A DNA stretch of 64,000 nt from IMGVR_UViG_3300029922_000001:62001-126000, one strand, 5' to 3'; shown: positions 3,332 through 58,559, counted from the first letter of the stretch. The notes: generated by a model from the sequence alone, not told the origin. A program made the numbers and translations.

Positions 3332-4429
3332 ATGCATTACGATTTTCTAATTGTAGGAACTGGCTTTTATGGAGCTACCTTTGCTAACATAGCCCATGCC
3401 AAGGGCTATAAGGTTAGAATGATCGAACAACGCAATATTCCTGGTGGGAATAGCAGTACTGAATTAATACACAACATAAATGTTCATACTCATGGACCAC
3501 ATATTTTTAGAACAAATAAAGAGGAAATATGGGAGTTCATTAATCAATTCACTAAATTTCATCATTATTCACACAGACTAAAAGTAAGTCATAATAATAA
3601 ACTTTATTCCTTTCCCATCAATTTAATGACAATGCATCAGGTTTGGGGTGTAATGTCTCCAAATGAAGCAAAAGATAAGTTAGAGTCTGTAAGAGTTCAT
3701 AATGATAATCCAAAAAATATGGAAGAGTATTGTCTTTCTTTGATTGGTGAAGAATTATATGAAATTTTCATTAAAGGATATACCACTAAACACTGGGGAA
3801 GATCCCCTAAAGAACTACCTGCTTGGATTGTAAAGCGTATCCCTGTACGTTTCAATCTAGATGATCACTATTACCATAATGATAGTCAATATGAAGGTAT
3901 TCCAATTGGTGGTTACACGCGCATGTTTGAGAATATGTTAATAGACATTCCTGTAGATTACAATACTAACTTCATGGAAAATAAAAAAGAACTCAGCAAG
4001 ATAGCAGATAAGATTATCTTTACGGGTTGTATTGATGAATATTACGATTATGCTTTAGGTCGATTAGAATATCGTTCTTTAGATTTTCATCACGAAGTAC
4101 ACAAAGGAGATTATCAAGGTTGTTCTGTTGTTAATTATGCAGATGTAAATATTCCTTATACTCGTATTGTAGAGCATAAACATTTTGAACATTCTGATTC
4201 GGAATACACAATTATAACTAAAGAATATCCCAAAGCTTATACTACAGGTTCCGTTCCATACTATCCCATTAATGATGATACCAACAATAACTTATTTAAG
4301 AGTTACCAAGAGTTAAGTTCTCATGACAATAATGTGGTTTTTGGTGGCAGACTTGGTTCGTATAAATATTACGATATGGATCATGCAATTGCGGCTTCAA
4401 TGACACTTTCAAAAAGGTTATTGAATTAA
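3332..4429 (+). CDS. glf: UDP-galactopyranose mutase
   Basis: FAD-binding N-terminus LIVGTGFYGA, GGN, HTHGPHIFRTN, EYRSLDF, YTRIVEHKHF, PYYP, GGRLGSYKYYDMD; full length 365 aa. Confidence 0.95.
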   Translation: MHYDFLIVGTGFYGATFANIAHAKGYKVRMIEQRNIPGGNSSTELIHNINVHTHGPHIFRTNKEEIWEFINQFTKFHHYSHRLKVSHNNKLYSFPINLMTMHQVWGVMSPNEAKDKLESVRVHNDNPKNMEEYCLSLIGEELYEIFIKGYTTKHWGRSPKELPAWIVKRIPVRFNLDDHYYHNDSQYEGIPIGGYTRMFENMLIDIPVDYNTNFMENKKELSKIADKIIFTGCIDEYYDYALGRLEYRSLDFHHEVHKGDYQGCSVVNYADVNIPYTRIVEHKHFEHSDSEYTIITKEYPKAYTTGSVPYYPINDDTNNNLFKSYQELSSHDNNVVFGGRLGSYKYYDMDHAIAASMTLSKRLLN

Positions 4430-14383: not shown

Positions 14384-14393
14384 AGATGTAATT

Positions 14394-14828: not shown

Positions 14829-14850
14829 ATAAATTGTATAACAAAACATC

Positions 14851-17475: not shown

Positions 17476-17497
17476 TAAGTTGGATAGATTGCCTGGA

Positions 17498-18124: not shown

Positions 18125-18139
18125 ATTTTTTGAAAAAAT

Positions 18140-18165
18140 AAAGGTTTTGCCTATGAATTTTAGAA
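18140..18165 (+). promoter_or_regulatory. Putative promoter AAAGGTTTT-N14-GAA, flanked by a 14-bp inverted repeat
   Basis: Intergenic upstream of the protease; arms at 18124-18137 and 18183-18196. Confidence 0.65.
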
Positions 18166-18232
18166 AGGTGAAATATATGTGGTTTTTCAAAAAATCATTT
18201 CTGAGCATCGTTTAAGGGAGCCAAAAGAAAAC

Positions 18233-30936: not shown

Positions 30937-30944
30937 TAAGTCTA

Positions 30945-43509: not shown

Positions 43510-44381
43510 TAGTTTGGTGCTGCACTTAAAATTGAAACATTATTTGGTCCAAATTCTATTTCTTTATACAATTCTTTGGCTTGGATTTCAAAAGTTGAAC
43601 CATATAAGAGCGCCTTATTCTCACCTTTGTCTGTTGGCTTAATATCAGAAGCGAATACATCAAACAATAGTCTAATTGGTTTACGTAAAAACAATTGCAT
43701 ATTCACGATATTGTTAAATACTTGCTCTGGGCTGTAATTATCAGGCAAAGTGTTAAGTGCAATTTTTACCATATCATTAGATGGAACGTTATTCCAGCTT
43801 CCGTTAACTTTGTTTGCGCGTTGAATATCTCGCCAAAACAAAGTATACGCATGATATGCTAACACAGCAGAAGGTGTTATTGGGAGTGGTAAATTGCCGT
43901 TTGTAACACTCCAAAGGTCTTGTAACCCTGTAGACGCTTCTGCAATGTATGGTTGTAAAACAGCATTTATGTCAGGTTGATTAAGGAAGTATTCAGGGGA
44001 TAGAATTTGCGCATCTGTAAATGGGCAAAGGCTACAAACCCAAATAAATCTATGCTTTCTCATAACTTCATTTACTAGACGAGTAAATTCCAAAATACTT
44101 CTTTCACTATTTTCTTTATCATTGCTTTGTGCATAACAACTAATAGTAAACTTATATTCTTGTTGGCGAACACGAAAAGCTTTAAATGTTGGTGTAACAT
44201 TTGTTCCAAAAATAGAAATAGCAGGAGTGTCTGTGTTTGGAATAATAGTTCTGTCGCCAAAATACCATCCGACTACAGGCTTATCATAAATAGTAGGTAA
44301 GAACTTACCAGCAGAAACTTCTTTCTTTGGTAAATCATTAAAAATAATGCCTAATATTGTATCATATGCCTGTTCTAACAT
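43509..44381 (-). CDS. Tail terminator / tail completion-like protein
   Basis: WYFGD..TPAISIF..EYKFTISCY..ERSILEFTRLVNEVM pattern; follows the head-tail adaptor. Confidence 0.55.
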   Translation of the reverse strand: MLEQAYDTILGIIFNDLPKKEVSAGKFLPTIYDKPVVGWYFGDRTIIPNTDTPAISIFGTNVTPTFKAFRVRQQEYKFTISCYAQSNDKENSERSILEFTRLVNEVMRKHRFIWVCSLCPFTDAQILSPEYFLNQPDINAVLQPYIAEASTGLQDLWSVTNGNLPLPITPSAVLAYHAYTLFWRDIQRANKVNGSWNNVPSNDMVKIALNTLPDNYSPEQVFNNIVNMQLFLRKPIRLLFDVFASDIKPTDKGENKALLYGSTFEIQAKELYKEIEFGPNNVSILSAAPN

Positions 44382-44869
44382 TAAACTCCCTCAGACTTAT
44401 TATCTTTGTTGACTGGATTAAATGGTGCATTATATAGTGTTCCAGTAACGTATCTAGAACTCTTAGTGGCTCTAATATGATCTAGAACTCTTTCTCCGTT
44501 TTGCACTAATTTCAATTCATTTAAGGCTCTTTTTTCACCTTCTTTTTGTTCTTCTGTCTTTTGATTATCAGAACCTTGTAAGACTTGTTCATAAATGAAT
44601 CTAGCAGTCAATAGACTTGCAATATAAGGAATGGGTTGAGGATAGCCAATAATACCACCACGGTTAGTTTCGCGCAAAGGAACATCATAAATAGTTCCAA
44701 TTGCAGCATCAATTAATCCAGACGCCATTTCAATATAAAATTCAATGGTATCAAGTGGTAGATTATCTGATTGTGGACTACCAAATGTTGGGTTATCATT
44801 ATCGCCCTCGACAAACAAATTAGATGGCAAAAACTTTCTTACACTATTTACATCGCAATATTTAGACAT
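44381..44869 (-). CDS. Head-tail adaptor, DUF1320 / Mu gp36-like
   Basis: MSKYCDVNSVR, YIEMASGLIDAAIGTIYDVPL, PQPIPYIA, ALNELKLVQNG; AGGAG SD before 44869. Confidence 0.75.
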   Translation of the reverse strand: MSKYCDVNSVRKFLPSNLFVEGDNDNPTFGSPQSDNLPLDTIEFYIEMASGLIDAAIGTIYDVPLRETNRGGIIGYPQPIPYIASLLTARFIYEQVLQGSDNQKTEEQKEGEKRALNELKLVQNGERVLDHIRATKSSRYVTGTLYNAPFNPVNKDNKSEGV

Positions 44870-45587
44870 TTTTAACTCCTTTTCCTGGTTGAGAAGTATC
44901 ATCCTTAATAACTGGATTTTGAGTAATCTGATTATTAAGTCTGTTTTGAATTTCCAAATAATTAGGAACATAATCAATGCCCTGATTTTGTGGTAGTAGA
45001 TTCATTGCTTCAACTTCTTCTCGTCTTTTGAGCGTATAAACATTGGTGTGTGTAAGGTCATCAGCACTTTGAGAAGCTGAAGATACGAATTTAGGATAAT
45101 CTAATTCAATATCATTAAATCCACCAATAGCAGCGTTATAAATTTCAACAGCATCAGGTGCTTCAGGAGTATCCTTAATATGGTTATATCTTTGTGCTTG
45201 TCTTTTTGTGATATTGGTAGCTAAAACAAAACCACCCTTAGAGTGGACAAGTTTAATAACTTCACCAACAGGTAAACCTTCTTGGATTTTTTCTTGGATT
45301 TTATAAATATTTACATGTTCACCTTCTAAACATGTATATTGTTCACCAGGCAAAACCCAAATGTCTAAATTGTTTTGAGTGGCAATTTGAACTCCAAGCC
45401 ATCCTATATTTGGACCATTAACATCAACCAATCCTACAATGTCTAGTCCCTGAAAAATAGCAGTTAAAAGGATATTTCTAACTGCTGTGGAGATTGCATT
45501 AGAATCATTAAGATTATTTAGGTTAGTACAATATATACCTAAATCTATCCTTAATTGATTTTTGCGCAGGGCTTTACGATACCACAT
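44862..45587 (-). CDS. Degenerate PHP-domain protein with MWYRKA N-terminus
   Basis: RIDLGIYC, GLDIVGLVD, VLPGEQY..GEH, VHSKGGFVLATN, PDAVEIYN follow the PHP fold but metal-binding His residues are replaced. Confidence 0.6.
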   Translation of the reverse strand: MWYRKALRKNQLRIDLGIYCTNLNNLNDSNAISTAVRNILLTAIFQGLDIVGLVDVNGPNIGWLGVQIATQNNLDIWVLPGEQYTCLEGEHVNIYKIQEKIQEGLPVGEVIKLVHSKGGFVLATNITKRQAQRYNHIKDTPEAPDAVEIYNAAIGGFNDIELDYPKFVSSASQSADDLTHTNVYTLKRREEVEAMNLLPQNQGIDYVPNYLEIQNRLNNQITQNPVIKDDTSQPGKGVKNV

Positions 45588-46701: not shown

Positions 46702-47961
46702 TTATTTTTTCTGTGTGGGTAATTGATTTCCTTTTTCCACAACACTTTGTTGATATTTTTGTACAGCTTCATAAACCTCATTTGCAGAAGCAGAGTCAAT
46801 ATATTCAATCATACTCTTGCCTTGCCTCATAGCTAGAAGGGCAGATTTCCAAGGAGTTGATTCAGCAATGTAATTAAAAGCAGTATCATCTAAATCTTTA
46901 TTAGCTTGGTATATTTCATTTAAATCATTCATTAAACTAATAACACTAATGACGGGTTTGTGAATAGACATGATTTGAGGTTCACCAATACTAGACATGG
47001 CTGTTGTCGAAGATATAGTGATAACTGTTTTGGTAAACGTCGTACCGCCAGTTCCATCAGTGCCAGTGCTAGGAGAGCCAACATCTAACATAAAAAATTC
47101 TGGAGCATAAAGAGATAAAAAGTCGATAGCTTCTTTATTAGAAGCTGTTGATTGTGCTGTTATAGATCGCTGTTGTGCTTTAGGTATTACACTGGTGTCA
47201 TATGACATAGTTCGCATTTTTAATCGCTTAAAATTAGAATCACACAAGACAATTCCCTCATGAATTTCTTCCAATGTATTTAAATAATTAAATGCTTCTT
47301 CAATACTATTAACTATTAGGTATAATGGTTTATCAACACCAATATCAATATCGTCTATTGATATTTCTTCAAGATTAGAGTCCACCACACACAATAATTG
47401 TATATAAGGTTTGTCATATAGAATACCAACTCGTAAATCTTCATCAAAAACTTCAAAACTGTAACTGTAACCAGGTATTAATTTTGATGTAAACTGTTCC
47501 CAAGTTAAATGATAAACATCCAACAAAATGCTTCTAAAAACATCAGCAAATGTACGTGAGTGATTTGAAAAATTAACTGATCCAGCTAAAATATTTGCCG
47601 TGGGATGTATTCTGCAACCAATATGCCAACTATTTTTATAGTAATACACAAACAATAAAGCGCCGTCATACTTAATAGACGCTCTGGCTTGATTCCAATC
47701 AAAATTACGTTGTACGGAAAATGCATTAGGTTCTCCATAATAGAAAAATGCATTTAATGACTTACATACAACATTCCAACTTTCATTCTCTAAGATTAAC
47801 CCGCGACTCTCTTGAACCATTGGTATATGCAACGGACTAAAATTCGTATAATTGAATAAGACCAATGGTAATTCACTGTCCACAGTAACTTCTATGTTAA
47901 AATCCTGCTTTATATCTTGCAGTGTCTTACCATCTAATAAATATTTTTGAAGCTCCAGCAT
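46702..47961 (-). CDS. RNA ligase, T4 Rnl1-like
   Basis: LVLFNY, QESRGLIL, KSLNAFFYYGE, motif I KYDG, SFEV, EGIVL, KRLKMR. Confidence 0.82.
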   Translation of the reverse strand: MLELQKYLLDGKTLQDIKQDFNIEVTVDSELPLVLFNYTNFSPLHIPMVQESRGLILENESWNVVCKSLNAFFYYGEPNAFSVQRNFDWNQARASIKYDGALLFVYYYKNSWHIGCRIHPTANILAGSVNFSNHSRTFADVFRSILLDVYHLTWEQFTSKLIPGYSYSFEVFDEDLRVGILYDKPYIQLLCVVDSNLEEISIDDIDIGVDKPLYLIVNSIEEAFNYLNTLEEIHEGIVLCDSNFKRLKMRTMSYDTSVIPKAQQRSITAQSTASNKEAIDFLSLYAPEFFMLDVGSPSTGTDGTGGTTFTKTVITISSTTAMSSIGEPQIMSIHKPVISVISLMNDLNEIYQANKDLDDTAFNYIAESTPWKSALLAMRQGKSMIEYIDSASANEVYEAVQKYQQSVVEKGNQLPTQKK

Positions 47962-47972
47962 TTATATTTGTA

Positions 47973-49859
47973 TTATACATTTTTTATTTTGCAAATACCA
48001 AATGTTGGTTTAGTAGATACATCAACAGGAATTATGTTAAAGTGATATGTTTCTTGAATATTTTTTTGAATGGAATACAATAAATCCTCAGTACCATAAA
48101 TAACCATCAATTGTTTAGGCTGTAAAGTCGGTATTAGTATTTTAAGTAAATTATCCAATTGTGTACCAGCAGTTTGAAGAAATAAAGGATTGGTTGATAC
48201 TGCCAAAGTATCCAACAAAATTAAATCACTATTTTGAACTTGGTATTCAATGTCATTTTCTATGTATGGCTTGTGAAGACTTATAAGCTTTGCCAACATA
48301 AGATGATCTTGATAAATAAGCTTAATATTTTGCGTTATCTTAAATGGTGCATGTTCATACAAATCCTGAAGATCCTTATTCATCCCATTAATAACGGAAT
48401 AGACCTTTTTGCCCTGTAAAGCAGCATGTAGACAAAATATACCATTACCAGGTGTAGCTTCTAAGACACTCTTAATACCATTGCCTTCCAAAATAGAGTT
48501 AAATGTGTTTATTGCATTTGTGTTGGGACTCAAATCATTAGCAAAAGTCCTGCCTGTAGTATTAATAAACATATTTGGGTCCATATCGACATTGAATCCA
48601 ACTTTAGACTTAGCAATAAACCCATCTAACAATGCCCTGGAATTACCGTTAAAATGTAGAATTTTAGCTGGCAGTTTATTAACATCATCTATGCTTTTTA
48701 TTTTATCCAAGTGAGAATGTAGCTGATAATTGTAACTATTCTTAATGAAAGCTGTGTTTTTTAGTCTAATAGTGGCAATGTTAGTTAATATTTGTTCTCT
48801 AATGGAATTAAACTTGTGCGATTCCCAAATTTCTGCTTTTGGAAACATTCTCAATAAGATATCTTCTATTGCATAGAAAGCCTGTCGTGAACCACCATAA
48901 ACACCTGTGTTGATTACTATTTTAGACTTACATTCATCTTCGGTTAACCCTAAATCTATTAATTCTTCAAGATTAGAATCATAAATCCATGATGCAGATT
49001 CATATAGTCTAATATAAGGTGTCATCCCTAATTCTTTAGTGGTGATAAAGACACTATCATCTAAAACCTTCAATGCTTCTAATAATTGACCAACAACATC
49101 TTCTTTAAACAACATATCACAGTCTAAAAATAAGAAATATTCAGAATCACACACATGAGGAATGGAGTGAGAAATTAGTTTCTTACCAATAGCTGTTTTA
49201 TTCTTTTTGTCTTCGCATTTAATTTCAATTACATTATTGTCTAAACAAAACTTTTCAACTTCAGGCGTACTATCAAAAGAAAGAGCGATAAATTGCAGAT
49301 CGTTTAAGTTTGAAACTTCACTTAATGAATCCAGCATGGATTTGAACAACTTTAGGAAGTTGGGTGTAATGGTTGTCATTATTGAGATTGGCTTAGAAGT
49401 GTTTTTAGGAGTTGTATTAGCCCATAAATGAGAGAAGCATCCTTGGAATTTATTAATTTTCTCTTTACTTAATTTGGGATCAATCCAGATGCTATGAGCA
49501 TTACCTGTGGTTTTTAAAGTGAGTATTTTAGCTCCACGTAAATTACAAGCAATGCTTCTCTTTCCATCCCCTTTAATCAATTGTGGTATGTGAGCAACTA
49601 ATAAATCATCCGCATATACAAAAAATTCTGAAAATCTATCATCTAAACAAGTGGAATTTATGCCAACCTCCATAATTAGAGATTCCCATTCGCCGTTTAA
49701 GTCGAAAACTAATTCACTAGGTGGGTGAGCAGAAAAACTACGTGTGTAATATTGATCTTTGACGTTGATCCACTCATTATCATAACCAGTCACACCTGAA
49801 TAACCTATATTCTGGTATCCAGACACTGCTTTAATGGGTTTCAAGTCATCTAAATACAT
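47973..49859 (-). CDS. NPCBM - GT8-like glycosyltransferase - methyltransferase-like fusion
   Basis: N-terminal YLDDLKP..SAHPPSELVFDL..VGIN..YADD..HSIWIDPKL (NPCBM); FLFLDCDML, INTGV, EQ, YNYQ, ILHFNG (GT8); VLEATPGNG (SAM-binding-like). Confidence 0.75.
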   Translation of the reverse strand: MYLDDLKPIKAVSGYQNIGYSGVTGYDNEWINVKDQYYTRSFSAHPPSELVFDLNGEWESLIMEVGINSTCLDDRFSEFFVYADDLLVAHIPQLIKGDGKRSIACNLRGAKILTLKTTGNAHSIWIDPKLSKEKINKFQGCFSHLWANTTPKNTSKPISIMTTITPNFLKLFKSMLDSLSEVSNLNDLQFIALSFDSTPEVEKFCLDNNVIEIKCEDKKNKTAIGKKLISHSIPHVCDSEYFLFLDCDMLFKEDVVGQLLEALKVLDDSVFITTKELGMTPYIRLYESASWIYDSNLEELIDLGLTEDECKSKIVINTGVYGGSRQAFYAIEDILLRMFPKAEIWESHKFNSIREQILTNIATIRLKNTAFIKNSYNYQLHSHLDKIKSIDDVNKLPAKILHFNGNSRALLDGFIAKSKVGFNVDMDPNMFINTTGRTFANDLSPNTNAINTFNSILEGNGIKSVLEATPGNGIFCLHAALQGKKVYSVINGMNKDLQDLYEHAPFKITQNIKLIYQDHLMLAKLISLHKPYIENDIEYQVQNSDLILLDTLAVSTNPLFLQTAGTQLDNLLKILIPTLQPKQLMVIYGTEDLLYSIQKNIQETYHFNIIPVDVSTKPTFGICKIKNV

Positions 49860-51205
49860 TATTTAAGCTCCTTATACAAAAACTCCACATTTGGAGTGAA
49901 ATTCAAAATAGTATTATACTGCTGTAAAAGATTTATTCCGTCATCTGCTGTAAAGAGTAGAACTTTAATATCTCCATACTCAGAAGTTGCAACGATCTTA
50001 TCGTGAACGTTGAAAATTTGCAGATTCTGAACGTTGTGTGGTAATTCACCATACTCTCTGTCTAGCGTAGTTATGTTTTTGCTTCTACATCCATATAGAT
50101 TTAACAAAGCGCCGTGACGATTCCATGTTTCACCATATTTTGACTGTTCCCACTCAGCTAAATACGGATAAAAAGTCTTAATGGCACTATCCATTGCCAT
50201 CATTGCCTTTTTAGAAGCTAAAAAGAAAACCGAGTTAACAACGGTACTATAATGTCTTTCATTCTCATTAATTCGTAATTTTTCTAAGTCGCCTCTACTA
50301 GACACATAAAGATTTAAACCGGGTTCAACCATTGATGATTCGATTGTTGTAATGAAATTAGGTTTATATAATGGTGCAACGACATTATAAACAGGAGTGA
50401 CATTGAAAATATCAACTAAAGGCATAACGTTATCAAAAAATATCACACCAGGAGTGAGACTGATATAGTAATCAGCATTGACAACATAATGTGTTTTGTA
50501 TAAAGCAGTCTGTTCAGTGCCAGGGTTGCTTTTAACCACCATTTCACATTTAACCCAAAATGGTTTAAATGCACTAAATTTCCTCATTACATCTTCTGAA
50601 AGATTAAAATAATAAAGTATTAAAGGCGTTTTAGAACCATCATTAAAAGCGTAAAACGAAGAGAGTGTCTTTAATGCCATTTCCACCTTGTCTTCAGCCA
50701 CACACATAGCAATAGCTGTCTTAAATTTAGCTTTAGGCATGACATTAATTGGAATTCTAATTTTCCCAACAGGACCACTCGTATACACTGGTTTAGTTTT
50801 AAACAATAAAGGCTCTATCCATACTGAATGTGCATGTTGGTGAGTGTTACTGTGTGTGATTAGTTTTAATTGTCGTACACCTTCTAAATTAATATCTAAG
50901 TATACAATACCGTTTTCTTGTTTAATACCATTAGCTATACCTAATAATTCTTTACCAGACCATATTTGGAAATCAATAGAGACATAATCTGAACCTGTAT
51001 CGTTAATTGCGCATCCAATAGTCATCCAAGAGTATTTAGCATCTAAATCGTAAATTAATTCAGAGTTAGAATGAACACTAAGCGAATTCAAGAATTTTTG
51101 ACCTTTGATAGCGATAAATTTATCTTCAAAACCAAGAGTGCCATTTAACCCCAATTCTCCATATCCAGTTTTCTTTTCTATAGGAGTTGTTCTACTGAGA
51201 AACAT
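49859..51205 (-). CDS. NPCBM domain fused to a degenerate GT8-like domain
   Basis: SLSVHSNSELIYDL..AIND..FQIW..HSVWIEPLL (NPCBM); C-half follows the GT8 layout but has YYISLTPG where DxD is expected. Confidence 0.65.
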   Translation of the reverse strand: MFLSRTTPIEKKTGYGELGLNGTLGFEDKFIAIKGQKFLNSLSVHSNSELIYDLDAKYSWMTIGCAINDTGSDYVSIDFQIWSGKELLGIANGIKQENGIVYLDINLEGVRQLKLITHSNTHQHAHSVWIEPLLFKTKPVYTSGPVGKIRIPINVMPKAKFKTAIAMCVAEDKVEMALKTLSSFYAFNDGSKTPLILYYFNLSEDVMRKFSAFKPFWVKCEMVVKSNPGTEQTALYKTHYVVNADYYISLTPGVIFFDNVMPLVDIFNVTPVYNVVAPLYKPNFITTIESSMVEPGLNLYVSSRGDLEKLRINENERHYSTVVNSVFFLASKKAMMAMDSAIKTFYPYLAEWEQSKYGETWNRHGALLNLYGCRSKNITTLDREYGELPHNVQNLQIFNVHDKIVATSEYGDIKVLLFTADDGINLLQQYNTILNFTPNVEFLYKELK

Positions 51206-51211
51206 ATCTTA

Positions 51212-52681
51212 TTATATGTAATTATTGTTATTAGTGCGAATCCATTGACGAATAGGATTCTGCATGTCTCTTTCGACTGGATGCACCCAGTAATCCATAG
51301 GACCAATTTTGATATTCTCTATATTAAACTCCATTCGAAATTTAATATAATCAAAAGAAATAGGATTACGTTTACACTCTAAATTAGCACCAAGACACAT
51401 TAAGTTAAAGAATATTTCTTCTGTAGCAAATATCTTACTATCATTGATGGCTTGTGCATACAAAGGATCTTTGCAAGCTTGTAATATAGCGTCTGCTCCC
51501 TTTTTGGTAATGACGGTACCAGGATTAAAAGTCCAAAACTGATGGGTTTTTATAGGTATTTTATATTTTTCTACAATTGGTTCCCATATAGCAATTTCAT
51601 CATGAAAAGTGCGAATAGGATATGGTTCCATGTATTCATTAGAATCCTTAACAAAAGCAGGGAATTTATGCGAACCGTTTGGAGAAATCCAAATTCCAAC
51701 TTTAGGATTTTGGATTTTAGACATTAAATTACTATAGCCTTTTTGAAGTAAAAGTTGGTCAGAATCACAGTTTGTAATGGTGTCATAATTGAAATTATCA
51801 TTAGCAAACAACATACAATCAATCATGAAGTCGTGTAAACGTCCATATGATTGAGGTTGTGACTTTGGATGAATATATACGTTTGGGTATTGTTTTAGAT
51901 CAAAATTTTTAAGTAATTTCATATCATGACCACCATTATATAAAATTATCTTACTATGAGGATCAAAATATGTTAAATTTTTAACCATGTCTAGTACAAC
52001 GTCAATCTTTTCGTGTACTAAACAGGCAAACACATTTTGGAACTCTGGTTTAGGCGTAATGACTTTAGACATAGACGGATTTGAATTAATAACAGATAGT
52101 AAAGCTGTAGAGTTCTGATAATGTCTTTGTTTTTTGTAAATTTCAAATTCAGGTAAATAGAATGTCTGAATTTCATCCTTAACACCTAAATCAACCGTCT
52201 TTTGTGTGGTGGGAGTTTGAAATAGGGTTGGTATGACTTTTTCAGCAATAAGCCCTTTTTGTTTGTTGCAGTTTTTAAGTCGGACAAGATAATTACCAAT
52301 ATTTTTCAAAGCCTGAGTTTTGTAAATACCAATATTGAACCAATGTTCATCACACGCTGGATAATAATCGTATTTCATAGGGATACGTCTAATTAGTTTA
52401 CTATAAAAATTATCTCCAACGTCACACGTATCATGAATTAGAAAAACATATTCCTCTTCAATATTTTGTTCAATCACTTCAATAAGAATAGAGTATTCAA
52501 ACGAATTATGCGTCACATAATGATAAACAATGTCATTATTGACTTCAATTTTTTCCTGAGTATTTCCAGTAACCACTACGTAAATATCGTTGGCTGGCAC
52601 ACCAACGCTACATAGTTTTTTAACCAAATTATGTGTTTGATCAATATAATTGATAAATCCAGCAACCATTATTTTAACCAT
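51212..52681 (-). CDS. Two-domain glycosyltransferase-like protein
   Basis: N-domain THNSFEY..FLIHDTC; C-domain FACLVHE..IILYNGG..NCDSD (DxD); GGAG SD before 52681. Confidence 0.6.
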   Translation of the reverse strand: MVKIMVAGFINYIDQTHNLVKKLCSVGVPANDIYVVVTGNTQEKIEVNNDIVYHYVTHNSFEYSILIEVIEQNIEEEYVFLIHDTCDVGDNFYSKLIRRIPMKYDYYPACDEHWFNIGIYKTQALKNIGNYLVRLKNCNKQKGLIAEKVIPTLFQTPTTQKTVDLGVKDEIQTFYLPEFEIYKKQRHYQNSTALLSVINSNPSMSKVITPKPEFQNVFACLVHEKIDVVLDMVKNLTYFDPHSKIILYNGGHDMKLLKNFDLKQYPNVYIHPKSQPQSYGRLHDFMIDCMLFANDNFNYDTITNCDSDQLLLQKGYSNLMSKIQNPKVGIWISPNGSHKFPAFVKDSNEYMEPYPIRTFHDEIAIWEPIVEKYKIPIKTHQFWTFNPGTVITKKGADAILQACKDPLYAQAINDSKIFATEEIFFNLMCLGANLECKRNPISFDYIKFRMEFNIENIKIGPMDYWVHPVERDMQNPIRQWIRTNNNNYI

Positions 52682-53360
52682 TAATAACTCCATCTGTATC
52701 AAAACAAACATTTGTTCCAGAGACTTTCACACTTTGATTTTTGCATAAATACAATAACATTTGATTAACATTAGAATTCACCGAACCACTTTTCATTTCG
52801 GACATCAAATAATCATTAAGCTTCCGATCCCAACCAATTGCAGCAGGAACGTAAAAGTCTTTTGCTCTAACGTAAAAAGACGGTATCGAATAGAATTCAC
52901 TAGTGTTGCTATTATAGTCATTCCATAAATATTGATAATCTTCTGGATTTTTGATAGCACTCAAACTAGAATTTGCCCAAGTGTTAGCAAAACCCAATGG
53001 TATAGAACCCCAAGTTTGATGATAAGGAATGATAAAAGGACAATTTACAATATTTGGAATCACAATAAATTCGGAATCAATCACTGCTAACGAATCGCCT
53101 TCAACCGTATCTTTGATTGAATAAAACCTCTTATGAGTACTTGTTAAAGATAGTAAAAATGGCGTATATGCATCAAACTTGTCAACAGTATGAATATTTA
53201 AATTTGGATAATCTAACTTCAATTGTTGCAAATAGACATATAGATAAATATTGTTTTTATCCACAATTGCCGTCACTTCTTTTATGTCGCTACTTAAAAA
53301 TAAATAGTTCAATATGTTTTTTGTTTTTTCTTTTTGAGTAGAAAATACGTAGACGTGCAT
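52674..53360 (-). CDS. Hypothetical, possibly GT-A-like protein
   Basis: Beta-alpha N-terminus and AVIDSEF; inside the glycosyltransferase cluster. TATAAT 6 nt before ATG 53360. Confidence 0.45.
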   Translation of the reverse strand: MHVYVFSTQKEKTKNILNYLFLSSDIKEVTAIVDKNNIYLYVYLQQLKLDYPNLNIHTVDKFDAYTPFLLSLTSTHKRFYSIKDTVEGDSLAVIDSEFIVIPNIVNCPFIIPYHQTWGSIPLGFANTWANSSLSAIKNPEDYQYLWNDYNSNTSEFYSIPSFYVRAKDFYVPAAIGWDRKLNDYLMSEMKSGSVNSNVNQMLLYLCKNQSVKVSGTNVCFDTDGVING

Positions 53361-53376
53361 AATATCATTATACATT

Positions 53377-53943
53377 TTAGCTTTCTGGATTTATCAAAAG
53401 ACTATTTGTATTTGGATCAATTGCAGCTTGAGTTTTGCCTATATTGCCTGTAATCGTATTACTGTCAGTGGATGCCCCACCATAACATGTAATTTCTTTA
53501 ATACCAGTCCAGCCTTTTTCATTTTTATACTGTTCCCATTGTGTTTGATTAACTTGTCGTCCTGGTTCCACAGTATATATTTTTTCGCCGTTCTCATTGC
53601 TACTGGAATGAACAAATAAATTACGTTGACCATCTTTGGATGTAATAATGAAAGGTGGACTATCTGGACCTACTTTGCTTTGGAATTTTTCAATTTCACC
53701 TGGATCTAAGGCGAAACTAGTGATTTGATTACTTTCTAATTTACCACCACTATATGGCTTGATTGGATTCCCGTTTGCATCTGTTAAACTAGAACCTCCC
53801 GTTGGAGCAGTGACAACATTGTAATTCATTTGAGATAATTTGATGTATTGTGCGAATAAATCAGTAATTTGATCTGCCTCCAAATCATAACCCTTTGCAT
53901 CTATTCTGTTAGCAAATTTTAAAAACTGTTCTGCGTATTTCAT
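53377..53943 (-). CDS. Hypothetical protein with N-terminal helical tag
   Basis: Start reassigned to MKYAEQF (GGAG SD); KFANRIDAKGYDLEADQIT then IKLSQ. Confidence 0.7.
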   Translation of the reverse strand: MKYAEQFLKFANRIDAKGYDLEADQITDLFAQYIKLSQMNYNVVTAPTGGSSLTDANGNPIKPYSGGKLESNQITSFALDPGEIEKFQSKVGPDSPPFIITSKDGQRNLFVHSSSNENGEKIYTVEPGRQVNQTQWEQYKNEKGWTGIKEITCYGGASTDSNTITGNIGKTQAAIDPNTNSLLINPES

Positions 53944-54031
53944 CTGTTTTAACTCCAATATCATTCTCTTTTTTGACGTACATAATAAGGCATATAATAA
54001 ATAAGCTATAGTATATATAAGAAGAATTTTT

Positions 54032-55036
54032 TTATCCCAATCCACTATGCCAAATTTGACGATACATTCTAGACATTCCACCAGGCATTGTATTGGTAGG
54101 AGAGACGATAGAGAAGATATGTGGGTACCTTGAATAAGGTAAAGTTTCCTTATACTTTTCATAATCTTCTTTGTATGTCGCAGCCAATCCCTTAACATAA
54201 TCTGGTGTAATATTACTGTTAACCAACAACCTTTGTGTTTGTTGATTAAGAATTCTTGTTTGTAAGCTTCTCATAAGGAAATAACCAGCCCCTGAAATCA
54301 AAGCTGCATCCCATTCAAATGGTGCTTGAGCTACATTTTCAATTTTATAAGTACCAGGTAAAGCAGTAATTCCTGAAAGTGCCATTTTTAGAGCATCGTT
54401 CATCTCTCTGACAGTAAACATTCTGATTTGATAAGAAGCTACGACATCATCATATGGTTGTACTGCTTGAGGATTACCTTGAGTATTTACAGTATGTACA
54501 ACACCTTGATAATTAGGTTTAATTAATAATCCATCAGGGTAGTTTTGCCCTCCTTTAAGAGTTGTTTGAAAAATAGGATCATGATCACTTAAACCGGAAA
54601 ATCCACCAGGTTCAGCACTAGTAATTCTAAGTTCTAAAGGATTCCAATAATTCCAATTACCATGTTGAAATTTAGCCTTGGTACGTGTGTAATCAAAAAT
54701 CGCTAACTCATTACTTACGTTTACTTCAAGCAAATCTCTAACTTGATAATATAAACTTTGTTTAATTAAAGCTTCTTCACCCACAAATGGACCCATTGTA
54801 GATAGTACATTCATATTGGCATCTAATTCTACAACTTTGTAATAGTCAAATGGAGTACCATTAGCATCGTAATAATCATTAGCTGGAAATGGTATAATAT
54901 CTATTTCTTCATAATCGCCATTAAAGTTTAATGACTTTAGAATTTTATAGTAAGCTACATTTGTTCTGATTGTATAATCCCAAACAATGTAAATGGAGCG
55001 ACTATCATTATATAGCATTTCTCTGAAACATGACAT
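54032..55036 (-). CDS. Neck / head-completion-like protein
   Basis: FN3-like N-terminus (IVWD..AYYKILKS) plus helical adaptor-like C-terminus (REMNDALKMAL..FEWDAALISGA). Confidence 0.5.
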   Translation of the reverse strand: MSCFREMLYNDSRSIYIVWDYTIRTNVAYYKILKSLNFNGDYEEIDIIPFPANDYYDANGTPFDYYKVVELDANMNVLSTMGPFVGEEALIKQSLYYQVRDLLEVNVSNELAIFDYTRTKAKFQHGNWNYWNPLELRITSAEPGGFSGLSDHDPIFQTTLKGGQNYPDGLLIKPNYQGVVHTVNTQGNPQAVQPYDDVVASYQIRMFTVREMNDALKMALSGITALPGTYKIENVAQAPFEWDAALISGAGYFLMRSLQTRILNQQTQRLLVNSNITPDYVKGLAATYKEDYEKYKETLPYSRYPHIFSIVSPTNTMPGGMSRMYRQIWHSGLG

Positions 55037-55104: not shown

Positions 55105-55872
55105 TTAATCTAGTTCAAGATCAATAGATTCACCCATTCCACCTAAGTCCAAGTCAACATCTGGTTGATCTAGGTCAAGTGCAATATCTCCTTTAGCTGC
55201 GTATCTACGAGTTGCGATACCACCATGTCCATCAGCTTCAGCAACATAGGCATTACCTCTTTGCTGTTGTTGTGGATTGTAAGCTGGTCTATTTAACATA
55301 GCAGGACTAATGATGTTACTCTTATTCTTAGCTAAGTGTTCTGCGAAATCGGCTGGATCTAGGTATTCACCCTTGGCAGCAGCTTCATCAGAAGCAATTT
55401 GGAAAGCCGTGACGAATGAACGAGAGTCATTTGCATATCCAGCAGTAGAGACACGACTCTTTTGCTTACCTGTAGCGGAATTAATATCCATCAATTGTGG
55501 AGCATTACGTCCGTATTTCTCACGAATATGGGATTCTCTTTCTTCTTGTGCCCAAGCTTCTTGTTCTTTTTCTTGCTTTCTCTTACGAAGCATAGTATAT
55601 GTTTTTCTGTCAATACGTTGTAGAAAACCGCAGTCTAGTGCCGCAGTTAAATCGCGTGAACCACGAACGTACATAGGGTTTTCATGAGTTAAATCTTCTG
55701 CCTCAAATGGGGGAATAGATAACTTGATGTCACCAATAAATAAAGGTGTAGGTACAATGCTTCTAACAAGGAAATCGGTTGGATTTGCATCGGTGTTAAA
55801 GCTTCTTTCTTCTGCTTGTGCGTTTTTAGCGCCTAATTTTGACGAACGTTGTGGATTTGATAATTTTCCCAT
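55105..55872 (-). CDS. Hypothetical protein
   Basis: 255 aa, AAGGAG SD, own promoter motif. Confidence 0.75.
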   Translation of the reverse strand: MGKLSNPQRSSKLGAKNAQAEERSFNTDANPTDFLVRSIVPTPLFIGDIKLSIPPFEAEDLTHENPMYVRGSRDLTAALDCGFLQRIDRKTYTMLRKRKQEKEQEAWAQEERESHIREKYGRNAPQLMDINSATGKQKSRVSTAGYANDSRSFVTAFQIASDEAAAKGEYLDPADFAEHLAKNKSNIISPAMLNRPAYNPQQQQRGNAYVAEADGHGGIATRRYAAKGDIALDLDQPDVDLDLGGMGESIDLELD

Positions 55873-56432: not shown

Positions 56433-58559
56433 ATGAATAAAAAGCCTCAAAAAACAGCGGCGAATTTAGGCAGTTTAGTTGGTCCAGCAGTAATGGGACT
56501 TGTTGGTGCTGCCGCTGAACCATTAGTTGGTGAAGTTACAAGTAAATTACTTGGTGATGCGGCTCAGCCAGCAATTAATAATGCATTAAATCAACCAGCA
56601 GATGGTGATATTGCAGCCCCAGCAAAAGCCCCAATTGATTTTTTAACCGGCTTAGAAACAAAAAATAAGGATTTAGAAAGTTCAATTGGTCGCTTAACAG
56701 GTCAGGATACACAAACCCAAGGTGATACAGCCGCAAAACTAATTGATTTACTTAAACAGGCAGGAATAAGCCCAGCAAAGGCATATCCAGCTTGTCAAGC
56801 TGTATTTCAACAACTCGATGCGCGATTAGCTGGTGGTGACATTAATACGTTTTTAACTAACTACACAAATATATTAATTACAATGTTAAGGGCAAACATA
56901 GAACAGCCTCAAGTCGCTGTTCAAAAGGTTATAGAAATTGCCAAATTTGAACAGCAATATCCATTTTTTAGTAGTTTAGGATATCAACCATCTAAATTGG
57001 CAATTAAAAAATTAAGTGGAGGTAATATTAATGATGATTTAAACTCAATGCTTATGTTAGCCTATGCTCATGGTGGCAGTGAAGAATATGGTGAGGTTGG
57101 AAATGCAATTAAGAATTTTAATCAAATTTTAGAATTAGGCGCAACAAGAACCGATCAATTTGGTGTTCAAAATTTTTGGAAAATTCACGAACAGACTCAA
57201 GAAGCTAAACAAGAAGCCTATATTCAACATGGTAAAGTGTTAATGTCTCTACAAGAGGGTTATGATGAAATTCAAAAAGGAATGGCTCAATCATTAACAG
57301 CTTTAGGTATACCTACGGCTTATGCATCATTAGTAGGAACACCATTAATGATTATTTCTTTTGTTAAAAGTTTAGGTGGAACTATTGGTGGCGGTCCTGC
57401 TCCTACTTTGGCTTTTGTAGAAGATTTGAATATGAGATTAGCTTATGGTAATCATGGTTATAGATATGCACAGACTCCTACTACACCTACTACTCCTACT
57501 ACTCCTACTACACCTACTACACCTATCTCAATACCTCCATCTATTCCTAGTTCTTCTACTACTGATTTAACAACACCCTCAATATCTAAACCTTCTGGTA
57601 TGGGTTCAAAATCTATGTCAGGTACAGATCCAGCAAAAATGTCTTTATTAATGGAACAGGTAGTAAATACTATGCAAATATTGGATAAAAATTATCATAT
57701 TTATGAATCACTTATTCCAAATATGCAAGATCCTATTAAAACTGATTTGTCAGTAATGAAACCATCTCAGACTATGGATTTTGTTAATAGCCAACTACAA
57801 ATAGTTAATGATATTAAACCTATAATATTAAATGTATTAAGCTCGTTGACGAGATCTAATTCCATGTCTGATTCTACATTAAATTCTACTAATAATGAAG
57901 TGCAACAACTTGGAAAATATCCAAATCAATCCGATCTTTTAAAAATATTAACATATGAGTTCGCGCTTGAATCTGTGAAAGTTTCTTATAGTTTTGCAGT
58001 ACCATTGGTTCAATTAATGAATCAATTACGGAAAGAAAAAGCTGCTAGTGAATCTTATTTAGGATTCAAAGGTAGCGGGTTAAATCTTCCTGCAATTAAT
58101 ATAGAAACAATGATTAACTTAAATATGAAAATTAAAGATATTTATGAACAAGCCGCGACTGCGTATTCTGATCTATCAGGATCAGGTGGTGATAAAATTA
58201 CTGGTTTAGTTTCTAGTTGTCAGGCTAAAGCCGCTGAAGCTCTTTCTGAAGCATCTAAATTGATACAACAATACAATCTCGGTGGAATGAGTCTTGGAGC
58301 TAGTGTAAACCCTATAGATCGGTTAGAAAGACTTGCTGAAACTAGAAAATTAACTTTTGATGAGGTTTTGAAGTTTGCTGAAATCGCTCAAGAAGATAAA
58401 AAGCCTGATGAAGACGATGATGCTGGTTATGATTTTAGTGAACTTTTAGCTCATGTCAAAGATAAAAGTGATGACGAAATATATGATTATTTTGATGACT
58501 TATTACCTGGATATGGAAAACTTTATGAAGACATTGGTGAAGGTCATCATCAAAGCTAA
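56433..58559 (+). CDS. Large helical hypothetical protein (candidate virion/ejection protein)
   Basis: 708 aa; QKTAA, MRLAY, YRYAQ, KFAE motifs; central Pro/Thr repeat. Confidence 0.75.
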   Translation: MNKKPQKTAANLGSLVGPAVMGLVGAAAEPLVGEVTSKLLGDAAQPAINNALNQPADGDIAAPAKAPIDFLTGLETKNKDLESSIGRLTGQDTQTQGDTAAKLIDLLKQAGISPAKAYPACQAVFQQLDARLAGGDINTFLTNYTNILITMLRANIEQPQVAVQKVIEIAKFEQQYPFFSSLGYQPSKLAIKKLSGGNINDDLNSMLMLAYAHGGSEEYGEVGNAIKNFNQILELGATRTDQFGVQNFWKIHEQTQEAKQEAYIQHGKVLMSLQEGYDEIQKGMAQSLTALGIPTAYASLVGTPLMIISFVKSLGGTIGGGPAPTLAFVEDLNMRLAYGNHGYRYAQTPTTPTTPTTPTTPTTPISIPPSIPSSSTTDLTTPSISKPSGMGSKSMSGTDPAKMSLLMEQVVNTMQILDKNYHIYESLIPNMQDPIKTDLSVMKPSQTMDFVNSQLQIVNDIKPIILNVLSSLTRSNSMSDSTLNSTNNEVQQLGKYPNQSDLLKILTYEFALESVKVSYSFAVPLVQLMNQLRKEKAASESYLGFKGSGLNLPAINIETMINLNMKIKDIYEQAATAYSDLSGSGGDKITGLVSSCQAKAAEALSEASKLIQQYNLGGMSLGASVNPIDRLERLAETRKLTFDEVLKFAEIAQEDKKPDEDDDAGYDFSELLAHVKDKSDDEIYDYFDDLLPGYGKLYEDIGEGHHQS
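57474..57524 (+). repeat. 9-bp tandem repeat encoding (TPT)n
   Basis: ACTCCTACT/ACACCTACT, about 5.7 copies. Confidence 0.9.

What the first reader, a model, noticed from the sequence alone, without database searches (positions are those of the whole stretch)
47973..53360. NPCBM-glycosyltransferase fusions: a probable virion-glycosylation cassette
Seen: tandem genes NPCBM-GT8-methyltransferase-like (47973-49859) and NPCBM-degenerate GT8 (49859-51205), then two more GT-like genes, inserted between neck genes. Established: NPCBM modules are mostly known on glycoside hydrolases; some mycobacteriophages glycosylate their virions with GTs encoded near structural genes. Inference: a chain-building system with an active/inactive GT pair, glycan-binding modules for processivity, a methyl cap to end the chain, and Glf supplying Galf.
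Basis: partly seen in the sequence, partly recalled or inferred. Interest (0 to 1): 0.72.

Follow-up and report, generated by a model that had tools for sequence, protein, structure and literature searches.

The report
Jumbo-phage lectin-glycosyltransferase gene cassette
A 441-kb phage related to Bacillus phage G carries, inside its late structural gene block, sugar-adding enzymes fused to a sugar-binding module, one of them a catalytically dead copy; they belong to a large uncharacterised bacterial enzyme family and may coat the virus particle with sugars, though the target is unproven.

Summary
Both tandem genes (47973-49859, 628 aa; 49859-51205, 448 aa) start with a Pfam NPCBM/CBM51 domain. 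The 628-aa protein continues with a GT-A glycosyltransferase domain (invariant DxD and HFNG motifs) and a COMT-like methyltransferase fold. The 448-aa protein is a paralog in which both motifs are gone.

Gene 51212-52681 carries a further GT-A domain with a DSD motif. Gene 52674-53375 is only weakly GT-like. Glf exists, but 44 kb away next to the terminase.

Three corrections:
- "GT8" is a fold and motif resemblance; the Pfam GT8 model does not match.
- Methyltransferase activity is doubtful.
- Only the downstream "neck" flank (Mu Gp36-like) is confirmed.

The NPCBM-GT fusion is not a phage oddity. At least 100 clusters carry it, including Acidobacteriota, Planctomycetota and Sorangium, with the same NPCBM-GT-Methyltransf_24 layout or a sulfotransferase instead.

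The cassette sits at a conserved position in a clade of 380-480-kb phages that all encode Glf. A second lineage has its own dead/active tandem pair. The heterodimer prediction gives only weak support.

Virion glycosylation is the best-supported target but is inferred only. It is a new variant of a known kind.

The parts
47973..49859 (-). 628-aa three-domain enzyme. NPCBM/CBM51 covers residues 1-135. A GT-A glycosyltransferase covers about 155-425 (DxD at 246-248, HFNG at 402-405). A COMT-like class I methyltransferase fold covers about 407-628.
   Evidence: Pfam NPCBM. AF2 model, pLDDT 72.8. Foldseek and VIA matches. Atlas GT8-like TM 0.72. Motif conservation. No TM segment or signal peptide.
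49859..51205 (-). 448-aa paralog: NPCBM plus a GT-A-like domain that lacks DxD (T-P-G instead) and HFNG, and has no methyltransferase tail. Predicted catalytically dead. Its stop codon overlaps the start of the 628-aa gene (TAATG).
   Evidence: Pfam NPCBM. hhalign probability 99.9 against the 628-aa family. Alignment A2. Sequence at the junction. Weak-support complex prediction.
51212..52681 (-). 489-aa two-domain protein. The N-terminal domain (residues about 1-200 of the 489-aa product, motif THNS...LHDT) is conserved in all relatives. The C-terminal domain (about 221-489 of the 499-aa ORF as submitted to the Atlas) is GT-A (GT2/GT14-like) with a CDSDQ motif.
   Evidence: Atlas structure matches. 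Alignment A6. Synteny BLAST. No Pfam, PHROG or phage tblastn hit.
52674..53375 (-). 233-aa protein, possibly GT-A-like. The evidence is weak, and no homolog was detected in the relatives examined.
   Evidence: Atlas: own model pLDDT 0.42, TM 0.55-0.58 to GT2 clusters, feature hits to GT6/GT8-annotated phage clusters. No Pfam hit above the gathering score (a sub-threshold ASK_PH hit only) and no PHROG hit.
3332..4429 (+). UDP-galactopyranose mutase (Glf), next to the large terminase. A possible supplier of UDP-Galf. Conserved in two distant complete relatives.
   Evidence: PF03275 E 5.2e-76. Present in G001 and G002.
44381..44977 (-). Mu Gp36-like head-tail joining protein. It is the confirmed 'neck' gene, about 3 kb downstream of the cassette in the same gene string.
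   Evidence: PF07030 at 26.1 bits, above the cut-off. phrog_195. PF07030 also in the homologs of L001-L005.
46702..47961 (-). T4 gp63/Rnl1-like RNA ligase homolog immediately downstream of the 628-aa gene, conserved there in all relatives. Its C-terminal part has an S/T-rich stretch.
   Evidence: phrog_562 E 2.4e-17. PF09511 E 5.8e-6, below the cut-off. Synteny. Composition.
54032..55036 (-). 334-aa conserved protein that opens the gene string after a strong terminator-like hairpin (55088-55054). It has an FN3/Ig-like beta domain. Function unidentified.
   Evidence: Synteny. AF2 model pLDDT 66 with no convincing PDB match. Hairpin.

Best explanation
The cassette is a cytoplasmic glycan-building module. 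It is expressed with the late structural genes of a phage-G-like jumbo phage.

Its core is the 628-aa enzyme. This is a member of a widespread, uncharacterised family in which an N-terminal CBM51/NPCBM lectin module is fused to a metal-dependent (DxD) GT-A glycosyltransferase. The family often carries a C-terminal sugar-modifying domain, either a methyltransferase or a sulfotransferase.

Proposed mechanism, all inferred:
- The 489-aa protein, and perhaps the 233-aa protein, add the first sugars to an acceptor.
- The NPCBM module holds the growing or neighbouring glycan, so the GT-A domain can add further residues. The lectin domain of polypeptide GalNAc-transferases works this way.
- The C-terminal domain, if still active, O-methylates the product.
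- The dead paralog arose by tandem duplication. It keeps its lectin module and pairs with the active enzyme through a pseudo-symmetric GT-GT interface, as a non-catalytic subunit.
- The phage Glf may supply UDP-Galf.
- The most likely acceptors are the phage's own structural proteins, i.e. virion glycosylation as in mycobacteriophages and chloroviruses.

Shown: the domains, the motifs, the paralogy, the conserved position and the breadth of the family. Inferred: the donor sugar, the acceptor, methylation and heterodimerisation.
For: Domains and motifs.

Operon context: all genes from 55036 down to the Mu Gp36-like gene and the 1753-aa protein lie head to tail on one strand, after a terminator-like hairpin. 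The pair has a TAATG overlap.

Conserved position: the cassette sits between the 54032 homolog and the RNA-ligase/Gp36 genes in L001-L005, L009 and L010. The NPCBM-GT homologs in these loci are 25-53% identical to the window's 628-aa protein.

Soluble proteins: no TM segment or signal peptide.

No phage-encoded lipid-carrier initiation: PF02397 and PF00953 are absent. This argues against a self-contained exported-polysaccharide pathway.

No ThyA-like hydroxymethylase was found, which argues against hmC/hoC-type DNA glycosylation. The Tet_JBP search also found nothing, but its controls did not ring, so it is uninformative.

Glf is present in all three complete genomes of the clade.

Bacterial relatives swap the C-terminal modifier: Methyltransf_24/RMNT_CmcI in Sorangium and many MAGs, Stf0 sulfotransferase in Thalassoglobus. 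They sit beside GT2/GT4 genes. This fits a domain that modifies the sugar product.

A dead/active tandem pair recurs in a second lineage.

Complex prediction: ipSAE 0.39 against a best control of 0.00, called 'weak support'.

Precedents:
- PBCV-1 A064R is a GT-GT-methyltransferase acting on the capsid glycan (PMC7826918).
- Mycobacteriophage capsid and tail-tube glycosylation by GTs in the structural region, as summarised in PMC12619734 citing Freeman et al. 2023.
- The Che8 glycosyltransferase appears among the BFVD fold matches.
Against: - There is no direct evidence for any acceptor.
- In relatives the same locus hosts non-structural cargo: Ro60/TROVE, GGDEF and a methyltransferase. An RNA-ligase-like gene is always adjacent. 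Position among structural genes is therefore weak evidence.
- Bacterial homologs sit in polysaccharide-like clusters, not in known protein-glycosylation systems.
- The MCP has no C-terminal extension relative to phage G gp27.
- The methyltransferase-like domain lacks clear catalytic signatures and has no Pfam hit.
- G001 and G002 have no dead paralog, so the pair is not essential to the system.
- Glf is 44 kb away. Phage Glf has also been linked to DNA glycosylation in Pootjesviridae (PMC13326640).
- The AF2 model rests on a 4-sequence alignment, and residues 372-422 are low confidence.
Confidence: 0.45

Rival explanations
1. The enzymes remodel a host cell-envelope glycan (O-antigen, teichoic acid, capsule or EPS precursor) during infection. 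This could block superinfection or stop progeny from sticking to debris. The NPCBM would bind the polymer, and the methyltransferase would cap it as in ABC-transporter-dependent O-antigen pathways.
For: Bacterial family members lie next to GT2/GT4/TylF genes typical of polysaccharide loci. The top fold matches include polymerising enzymes: GlfT2, RfbC and hyaluronan synthase. Multi-GT plus methyltransferase architecture is classic for O-polysaccharide chain extension and termination (established knowledge of WbdA/WbdD).
Against: The genes lie in a late structural gene string of a presumably lytic jumbo phage. All four proteins are soluble, with no membrane anchor. No phage-encoded initiating transferase was found; a flippase was not searched for. 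Known phage serotype conversion uses membrane Gtr-type or O-acetyl systems in temperate phages (my own knowledge).
Confidence: 0.2
2. The cassette glycosylates phage DNA (base hypermodification) to evade restriction. Glf would supply UDP-Galf, as proposed for Pootjesviridae, and the NPCBM would bind already glycosylated DNA.
For: Phage Glf has been tied to DNA glycosylation gene clusters (PMC13326640). Phage GTs commonly act on DNA (Pyle et al. 2024, as cited in PMC12619734). Intracellular NPCBM domains have been proposed to sense modified invader molecules (PMC8195603).
Against: No thymidylate-synthase-like hydroxymethylase or hydroxylase (PF00303) was found in the complete genome. The Tet_JBP search (PF12851) also found nothing, but its controls did not ring, so that absence is untested. 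The GT genes are not near replication or nucleotide-metabolism genes. A carbohydrate-binding module plus sugar O-methyltransferase layout is not known for DNA glycosyltransferases. Other routes to a modifiable base cannot be excluded.
Confidence: 0.12
3. The two NPCBM proteins are mainly virion-borne lectins, adhesins or decoration proteins that bind host glycans. The GT-A and methyltransferase folds would be structural relics.
For: They lie in a structural gene block. The dead paralog proves that the fold can be kept without catalysis. CBM-bearing structural proteins are common in phages (my own knowledge).
Against: DxD and HFNG are invariant or at least 90% conserved across the active branch, which indicates purifying selection on catalysis. 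There are no collagen, coiled-coil or fibre-like regions and no PHROG structural hit.
Confidence: 0.08

Closest known systems
Uncharacterised bacterial NPCBM-GT-A-(Methyltransf_24 / sulfotransferase) family, e.g. the 715-aa protein of Sorangium sp. So ce726 (L016) and the 982-aa protein of Thalassoglobus neptunius (L059)
   Same: Same domain order: NPCBM, then a GT-A with LDxDxL and HFNG motifs, then a modifier domain. hmmsearch E-values run from 1e-60 to 1e-106 over profile positions about 8-415.
   Different: These are cellular genes in polysaccharide-like clusters, often with extra N-terminal GT2/GT6/HPAT domains. Their methyltransferase domain is recognisable by Pfam, whereas the phage's is not. 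No member has a tested function.
Chlorovirus PBCV-1 A064R (638 aa; GT-GT-methyltransferase that extends and methylates the major-capsid-protein glycan)
   Same: A virus-encoded, soluble, multidomain protein. It joins GT-A-type transferase domains to a C-terminal sugar O-methyltransferase and acts on a virion protein glycan (PMC7826918).
   Different: It has no lectin module and has two active GT domains in one chain. It comes from a eukaryotic virus and makes N-linked glycans. No sequence homology was shown here.
Mycobacteriophage virion glycosylation (Che8, Corndog; Freeman et al. 2023)
   Same: Phage GT genes placed among structural genes. The glycans are put on capsid and tail-tube subunits (as summarised in PMC12619734).
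   Different: tblastn of the window's proteins against 50,697 phage records finds nothing. Similarity to the Che8 GT is at the GT-A fold level only. Those systems have no NPCBM, no dead paralog and no Glf.
Polypeptide GalNAc-transferases (GT27 catalytic domain plus ricin-type lectin domain)
   Same: A GT-A catalytic domain fused to a carbohydrate-binding module. The module reads existing glycans to guide further glycosylation of a protein (my own knowledge). This is a functional analogy for the NPCBM-GT layout.
   Different: The lectin is C-terminal and of a different fold (CBM13). These are eukaryotic Golgi enzymes. No homology is claimed.
Mycobacterial galactofuranosyltransferase GlfT2
   Same: It is the best Foldseek match in PDB and Swiss-Prot (E 1.7e-9 and 7.5e-8). 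Its architecture is an N-terminal beta-sandwich, then GT-A, then a C-terminal domain, at about 630 aa. It uses UDP-Galf made by Glf.
   Different: The global TM is only about 0.18-0.2, so the match is domain by domain. GlfT2 is a GT2 inverting enzyme without an NPCBM or a methyltransferase. Use of Galf by the phage enzyme is untested.

Membership tests
NPCBM / CBM51 (Pfam PF08305) | Profile HMM match above the curated gathering score | tested here: met
   53.7 and 50.8 bits against a cut-off of 23.9, for the 628-aa and 448-aa proteins. Six-frame confirmation.
NPCBM / CBM51 (Pfam PF08305) | Discoidin-like beta-sandwich fold superposable on solved CBM51 modules | tested here: met
   Z 15.2, rmsd 2.1 A over 124 residues to ZmpB CBM51-2. 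Foldseek TMt 0.71 to 2vmi.
NPCBM / CBM51 (Pfam PF08305) | Binds galactose or blood-group-type sugars | not testable with these tools
   This needs a glycan array or ITC. The nearly invariant D84 of the family is not kept in the dead paralog.
Glycosyltransferase family 8 (Pfam PF01501 / CAZy GT8) | Sequence profile match to Glyco_transf_8 | tested here: not met
   No hit at E<=0.01 on the protein or at E<=0.1 in the genome. There is only a sub-threshold GT2 hit at the DxD region (E 0.0017).
Glycosyltransferase family 8 (Pfam PF01501 / CAZy GT8) | GT-A fold with a DxD metal site and a distal C-terminal His (H-x-x-G motif) | tested here: met
   TM about 0.72 to GT8-annotated Atlas clusters. RfaJ and GlyE are among the matches. 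D246, D248 and H402-F-N-G are conserved. GT2, GT6 and GT31 enzymes match about as well, so the fold does not discriminate between families.
Glycosyltransferase family 8 (Pfam PF01501 / CAZy GT8) | Retaining stereochemistry | not testable with these tools
   This needs product analysis by NMR.
Class I SAM-dependent O-methyltransferase (COMT / Methyltransf_24 / TylF type) | Rossmann-like class I methyltransferase fold | tested here: met
   Residues 407-628 against COMT: Z 17.5, rmsd 3.0 A, 196 residues aligned. Also TrmR and bacterial O-methyltransferases at Z 15-16.
Class I SAM-dependent O-methyltransferase (COMT / Methyltransf_24 / TylF type) | Sequence profile match and SAM-binding motif I (E/D-x-G-x-G-x-G), plus catalytic or metal residues | tested here: inconclusive
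   No Pfam hit for the window protein. Motif I reads LEATPGNG. The C-terminal domains of more distant 580-650-aa family members, which include the phage-encoded relatives, link to bacterial Methyltransf_24 at probability 98.3. The window clade links to those members only at probability 32. The D-x-x-H-E signature of the bacterial relatives is absent.
Phage virion-glycosylation systems (mycobacteriophage type) | GT genes embedded in the virion structural gene block | tested here: met
   The cassette shares its strand and gene string with the Mu Gp36-like gene and conserved structural-block genes, in seven related loci. The locus also carries non-structural cargo in relatives.
Phage virion-glycosylation systems (mycobacteriophage type) | Glycans demonstrably attached to capsid or tail proteins | not testable with these tools
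   This needs virions, glycostaining and MS. The genome is a metagenomic record.
ABC-transporter-dependent O-polysaccharide synthesis with a methyl chain terminator (WbdA/WbdD type) | An initiating phosphoglycosyl transferase or lipid-carrier pathway, with export components accompanying the GTs | tested here: not met
   PF02397 and PF00953 are absent from the complete phage genome. All cassette proteins are soluble. Host enzymes could still supply these steps. ABC transporter genes were not searched for.

The most novel reading that the evidence does not exclude
NPCBM-GT-A-modifier proteins form a large, unrecognised class of lectin-guided glycosyltransferases, a prokaryotic counterpart of the lectin-bearing GalNAc-transferases. 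Phage-G-like jumbo phages have captured one. At least twice independently they duplicated it into a dead-subunit/active-subunit heterodimer. It builds a Galf-containing, methyl-capped glycan coat on the virion, giving protection or adhesion.
Probability: 0.15. Interest if true: 0.75.

Novelty: new variant of a known kind. Interest (0 to 1): 0.52.

Why it matters
Virus-encoded glycosylation of the particle is established only for chloroviruses, other giant viruses and some mycobacteriophages. Showing it in a clade of 380-480-kb environmental phages would extend it to jumbo phages. It would also bear on phage stability, adsorption and immune or defence recognition.

Independently of the target, the work defines a large protein family with no Pfam model for its catalytic domain and no characterised member. 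It has at least 100 clusters at 50% identity and occurs in Acidobacteriota, Planctomycetota, Chloroflexota, Myxococcota and phages. The swap of methyltransferase for sulfotransferase at the C-terminus, and the recurrent dead-paralog pairs, give concrete and cheap hypotheses for enzymology.

Tried and rejected
Searches that found nothing:
- PHROGs found nothing for the four cassette proteins.
- phmmer against PDB sequences found nothing useful.
- megablast and tblastn against 50,697 GenBank phage records found nothing for the region, the 628-aa protein, the 489-aa protein or the flanking genes 44862 and 54032. No cultured phage can serve as a model. Only the MCP links the genome to Bacillus phage G.

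Technical failures:
- The search for related loci with the 84-sequence alignment failed, because no conserved stretch was available.
- Pfam on that alignment exceeded the size limit. Ten representatives were scanned instead.

Inconclusive tests:
- A direct hhalign of the window's C-terminal domain against bacterial Methyltransf_24 gave only a 28-column motif-I alignment (probability 2.4). An intermediate profile helped only partly.
- The AF2 model of 54032-55036 gave no convincing structural match, so the upstream 'neck gene' claim could not be confirmed.

Alternatives marked down:
- DNA glycosylation was considered and marked down, because no ThyA-like gene was found. The Tet_JBP search had silent controls and is uninformative.
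- An own nucleotide-sugar pathway beyond Glf was sought and not found: neither Epimerase nor NTP_transferase is present.

Paper checked:
- The 'moraphage' paper (PMC12619734) was checked as a possible description of this lineage. It does not fit, since those genomes reach only 307 kb.

Full report
**Context**

The window is bases 62001-126000 of a 441,498-bp virus record that CheckV rates complete. GC content is about 34%.

The window holds these packaging and head genes:
- a large terminase at 162-1688;
- a Mu-like portal at 14851-17475;
- a major head protein at 26465-27334 (phrog_2522, E 1.6e-65). It is 46% identical to gp27 of Bacillus phage G.

The phage is therefore an uncultured, distant relative of phage G. 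From 55872 down to 30310, every gene of at least 100 aa lies on the minus strand. The finding sits inside this block.

**The observation**

Four consecutive minus-strand ORFs occupy 47973-53375.

NPCBM domains:
- The 628-aa and 448-aa products each begin with a Pfam NPCBM domain well above the gathering score.
- They are the only NPCBM genes in the genome.

The 628-aa protein was modelled with AF2 (pLDDT 72.8, from a four-sequence alignment). The model has three domains:
- Residues 1-133 superpose on CBM51 modules (Z 15.2, rmsd 2.1 A).
- Residues about 155-425 are a GT-A fold. They match GT8-annotated Atlas clusters at TM about 0.72. They also match many GT-A enzymes of families 2, 6, 8 and 31.
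- Residues 407-628 superpose on catechol O-methyltransferase (Z 17.5, rmsd 3.0 A, 196 residues).

Sequence motifs fit a metal-dependent GT-A. L-D246-C-D248 and H402-F-N-G are invariant in the close relatives. The DxD is at least 90% conserved across 84 family members.

The Pfam GT8 model itself does not match. "GT8-like" is therefore a resemblance, not a membership.

The 448-aa protein is a clear paralog over the NPCBM and GT regions (hhalign probability 99.9, 379 columns). It has T-P-G where the DxD should be and has lost HFNG. Both changes are conserved among its orthologs. It is a predicted pseudo-enzyme.

The other two genes:
- The third gene really starts at Met11, so it spans 51212-52681. 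The Atlas holds that form. Its C-terminal half is a GT2/GT14-like GT-A domain with a conserved CDSDQ motif.
- Its N-terminal half is a phage-specific domain (THNS...LHDT). All relatives keep this domain, but the Asp is not always present. The window contains a paralog of it at 30310-30969.
- The fourth gene (52674-53375) is GT-like only on a low-confidence model.

None of the four proteins has a hydrophobic segment or a signal peptide.

**Context and conservation**

The 628-aa protein has only four close homologs among 5.8 billion clustered proteins. Their contigs, plus two IMG/VR genomes of 478,840 and 378,848 bp, show the same gene order:

1. homologs of 55948, 55105 and 54032;
2. a protein with the 51212 N-domain;
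3. a variable insert;
4. the NPCBM-GT-MT-like gene (628-651 aa);
5. an RNA-ligase-like gene;
6. small genes;
7. a Mu Gp36-like gene;
8. a roughly 290-aa gene;
9. a giant gene of about 1750 aa.

The Gp36-like gene passes Pfam's cut-off in the window. This confirms a head-tail joining gene downstream. The upstream flank (54032-55036) stayed unidentified after structure prediction.

In relatives, the variable insert carries Ro60/TROVE-vWA, a GGDEF protein and a methyltransferase. The locus therefore tolerates non-structural cargo.

The dead paralog occurs only in the window and its two nearest relatives, L001 and L002. G001 and G002 each have a single NPCBM gene.

Glf (3332-4429, next to the terminase) is present in all three complete genomes.

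**The family is large and mostly cellular**

A profile search of 1.84 billion representatives returned 1110 hits at E<=1e-3, and 128 at E<=1e-30. With local domain HMMs, 108 of the 161 proteins in hand carry NPCBM directly followed by this GT domain.

A scan of species-representative genomes found 56 bacterial loci. These include Blastocatellia and Pyrinomonadaceae, Planctomycetota, Chloroflexota, Verrucomicrobiota, Sorangium sp. So ce726 and Thalassoglobus neptunius.

Domain layouts vary at both ends:
- The Sorangium protein is NPCBM-GT-Methyltransf_24/RMNT_CmcI, next to a double GT2.
- The Thalassoglobus protein is GT2-NPCBM-GT-Stf0 sulfotransferase.
- Other members add GT2, GT6 or HPAT domains at the N-terminus.

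The interchangeable C-terminal modifier (methyl or sulfate) suggests that this domain acts on the sugar product.

The C-terminal domains of more distant 580-650-aa family members, which include the phage-encoded relatives, link to bacterial Methyltransf_24 at probability 98.3. The window's own clade links to those members only weakly (probability 32). It also lacks the D-x-x-H-E signature. Whether it still methylates is open.

**The pair**

The stop codon of the dead gene overlaps the start codon of the active gene (TAATG), and a Shine-Dalgarno-like AAGGAG lies upstream. L001 has the same overlap.

A quick ML tree places the window's dead clade next to the window's active clade (SH-aLRT 86). 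Both branches are long, so long-branch attraction is possible.

A second pair of DxD-less proteins, P0062 and P0072, groups with strong support beside a different active protein, P0019.
- In locus L071, P0062 is followed by a P0019-like gene with an intact LDADML motif, again with a TAATG overlap.
- P0072 heads three tandem NPCBM genes on a phage-like contig.

Tandem dead/active pairs thus recur, which argues that the dead copy has a function.

The complex prediction (residues 1-430 of the active protein with the dead protein) scored ipSAE 0.39 against 0.00 for the best control. The tool rates this "weak support": the mark was reached by 58 of 80 solved complexes and 2 of 110 mismatched pairs, but a pass at 0.60 or under is more often wrong than right. 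The predicted interface is pseudo-symmetric and uses equivalent GT segments of both chains. Because the two proteins are paralogs, this could equally reflect an ancestral homodimer.

**What it acts on**

Nothing here shows the acceptor.

For virion proteins:
- the cassette is co-oriented and apparently co-transcribed with structural genes;
- its position is conserved across a deep clade;
- the enzymes are soluble;
- the phage encodes no initiating phosphoglycosyl transferase;
- no ThyA-like hydroxymethylase that would create a glycosylatable base was found; the Tet_JBP search was uninformative because its controls did not ring;
- there are two precedents: PBCV-1 A064R, a GT-GT-methyltransferase for the capsid glycan (PMC7826918), and mycobacteriophage capsid and tail glycosylation (as cited in PMC12619734).

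Possible acceptors noticed nearby are a (TPT)5 repeat in the 708-aa protein at 56433-58559 and an S/T-rich stretch in the adjacent RNA-ligase-like protein. Neither was tested.

Against virion proteins:
- the locus also carries non-structural genes in relatives;
- the bacterial homologs look like polysaccharide enzymes;
- phage Glf has been tied to DNA glycosylation in Pootjesviridae (PMC13326640).

My estimates are about 0.45 for virion-protein glycosylation, 0.2 for host-envelope remodelling, 0.12 for DNA glycosylation and 0.08 for a purely structural lectin role.

**Verdict**

The functional story is plausible but unproven, and parts of it (GT8 membership, methyl cap, neck insertion, heterodimer) are weaker than stated.

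Novelty lies in three things: the phage context, the recurrent dead/active pairing, and the recognition of a big unannotated NPCBM-GT family. The kind of system itself is not new. I rate it a new variant of a known kind, of moderate interest.

Noticed in passing
window 14851-17475 (+): The Mu-like portal protein (874 aa) carries a C-terminal DUF559 / MTES_1575 restriction-endonuclease-like domain at residues about 789-858. This is an unusual fusion for a portal.
   Followed up: no
window 17408-18124 (+) and 18179-23788 (+): A Ser/Thr protein-kinase-like gene lies directly after the portal. It is followed by a 1869-aa protein that contains intein and LAGLIDADG homing-endonuclease signatures.
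   Followed up: no
window 56433-58559 (+): A 708-aa protein of unknown function has a perfect (TPT)5 repeat followed by a Ser/Pro-rich stretch at residues about 347-400. This is a mucin-like linker that could be an O-glycan acceptor. It has no Pfam or PHROG hit.
   Followed up: partly
window 46702-47961 (-): A T4 gp63/Rnl1-like RNA ligase homolog is always adjacent to the NPCBM-GT gene in relatives. Its C-terminal part holds an S/T-rich segment at residues 295-325.
   Followed up: partly
window 30310-30969 (-): This 219-aa protein is a paralog of the N-terminal domain of the 489-aa cassette protein (32% identity, E 2e-17; THNS...IHDTC motif). The phage therefore has two copies of this unassigned domain at the two ends of the minus-strand block.
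   Followed up: partly
L003/L004/L005 and L009 (relatives), between the 51212-like gene and the NPCBM-GT gene: Relatives carry a Ro60/TROVE plus vWA protein in this locus. L003-L005 also carry a GGDEF protein, and L003/L004 a class I methyltransferase. Together with the RNA-ligase-like gene, this hints at an RNA-repair or anti-defence cargo island.
   Followed up: no
L071:2536-5000, and the ENA contig carrying P0072: A second lineage has a DxD-less NPCBM-GT followed by a DxD-intact one, with the same TAATG overlap. One contig has three tandem NPCBM genes next to a TnpB/IS605 gene and radical-SAM genes.
   Followed up: partly
L011 (planctomycete-like contig), 13090-22943: The bacterial HPAT-NPCBM-GT-Methyltransf_24 protein P0155 lies about 3 kb from an extracellular contractile injection system cluster (eCIS_core, phage-sheath-like). 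This may be coincidence.
   Followed up: no
window 55088-55054 (-): A 16-bp-stem terminator-like hairpin with a T-run lies between genes 55105-55872 and 54032-55036. It may mark the start of the transcription unit that contains the cassette.
   Followed up: no
window 53377-54198 (-): The listed 273-aa ORF overlaps the end of gene 54032-55036 by 167 nt. The real gene probably starts at the Met at 53964 (about 195 aa). It has no detected homolog in the relatives and no family hit.
   Followed up: partly
window 8991-9356 (+): A DUF192 (COG1430) protein is encoded in the packaging and head region (E 3e-20).
   Followed up: no
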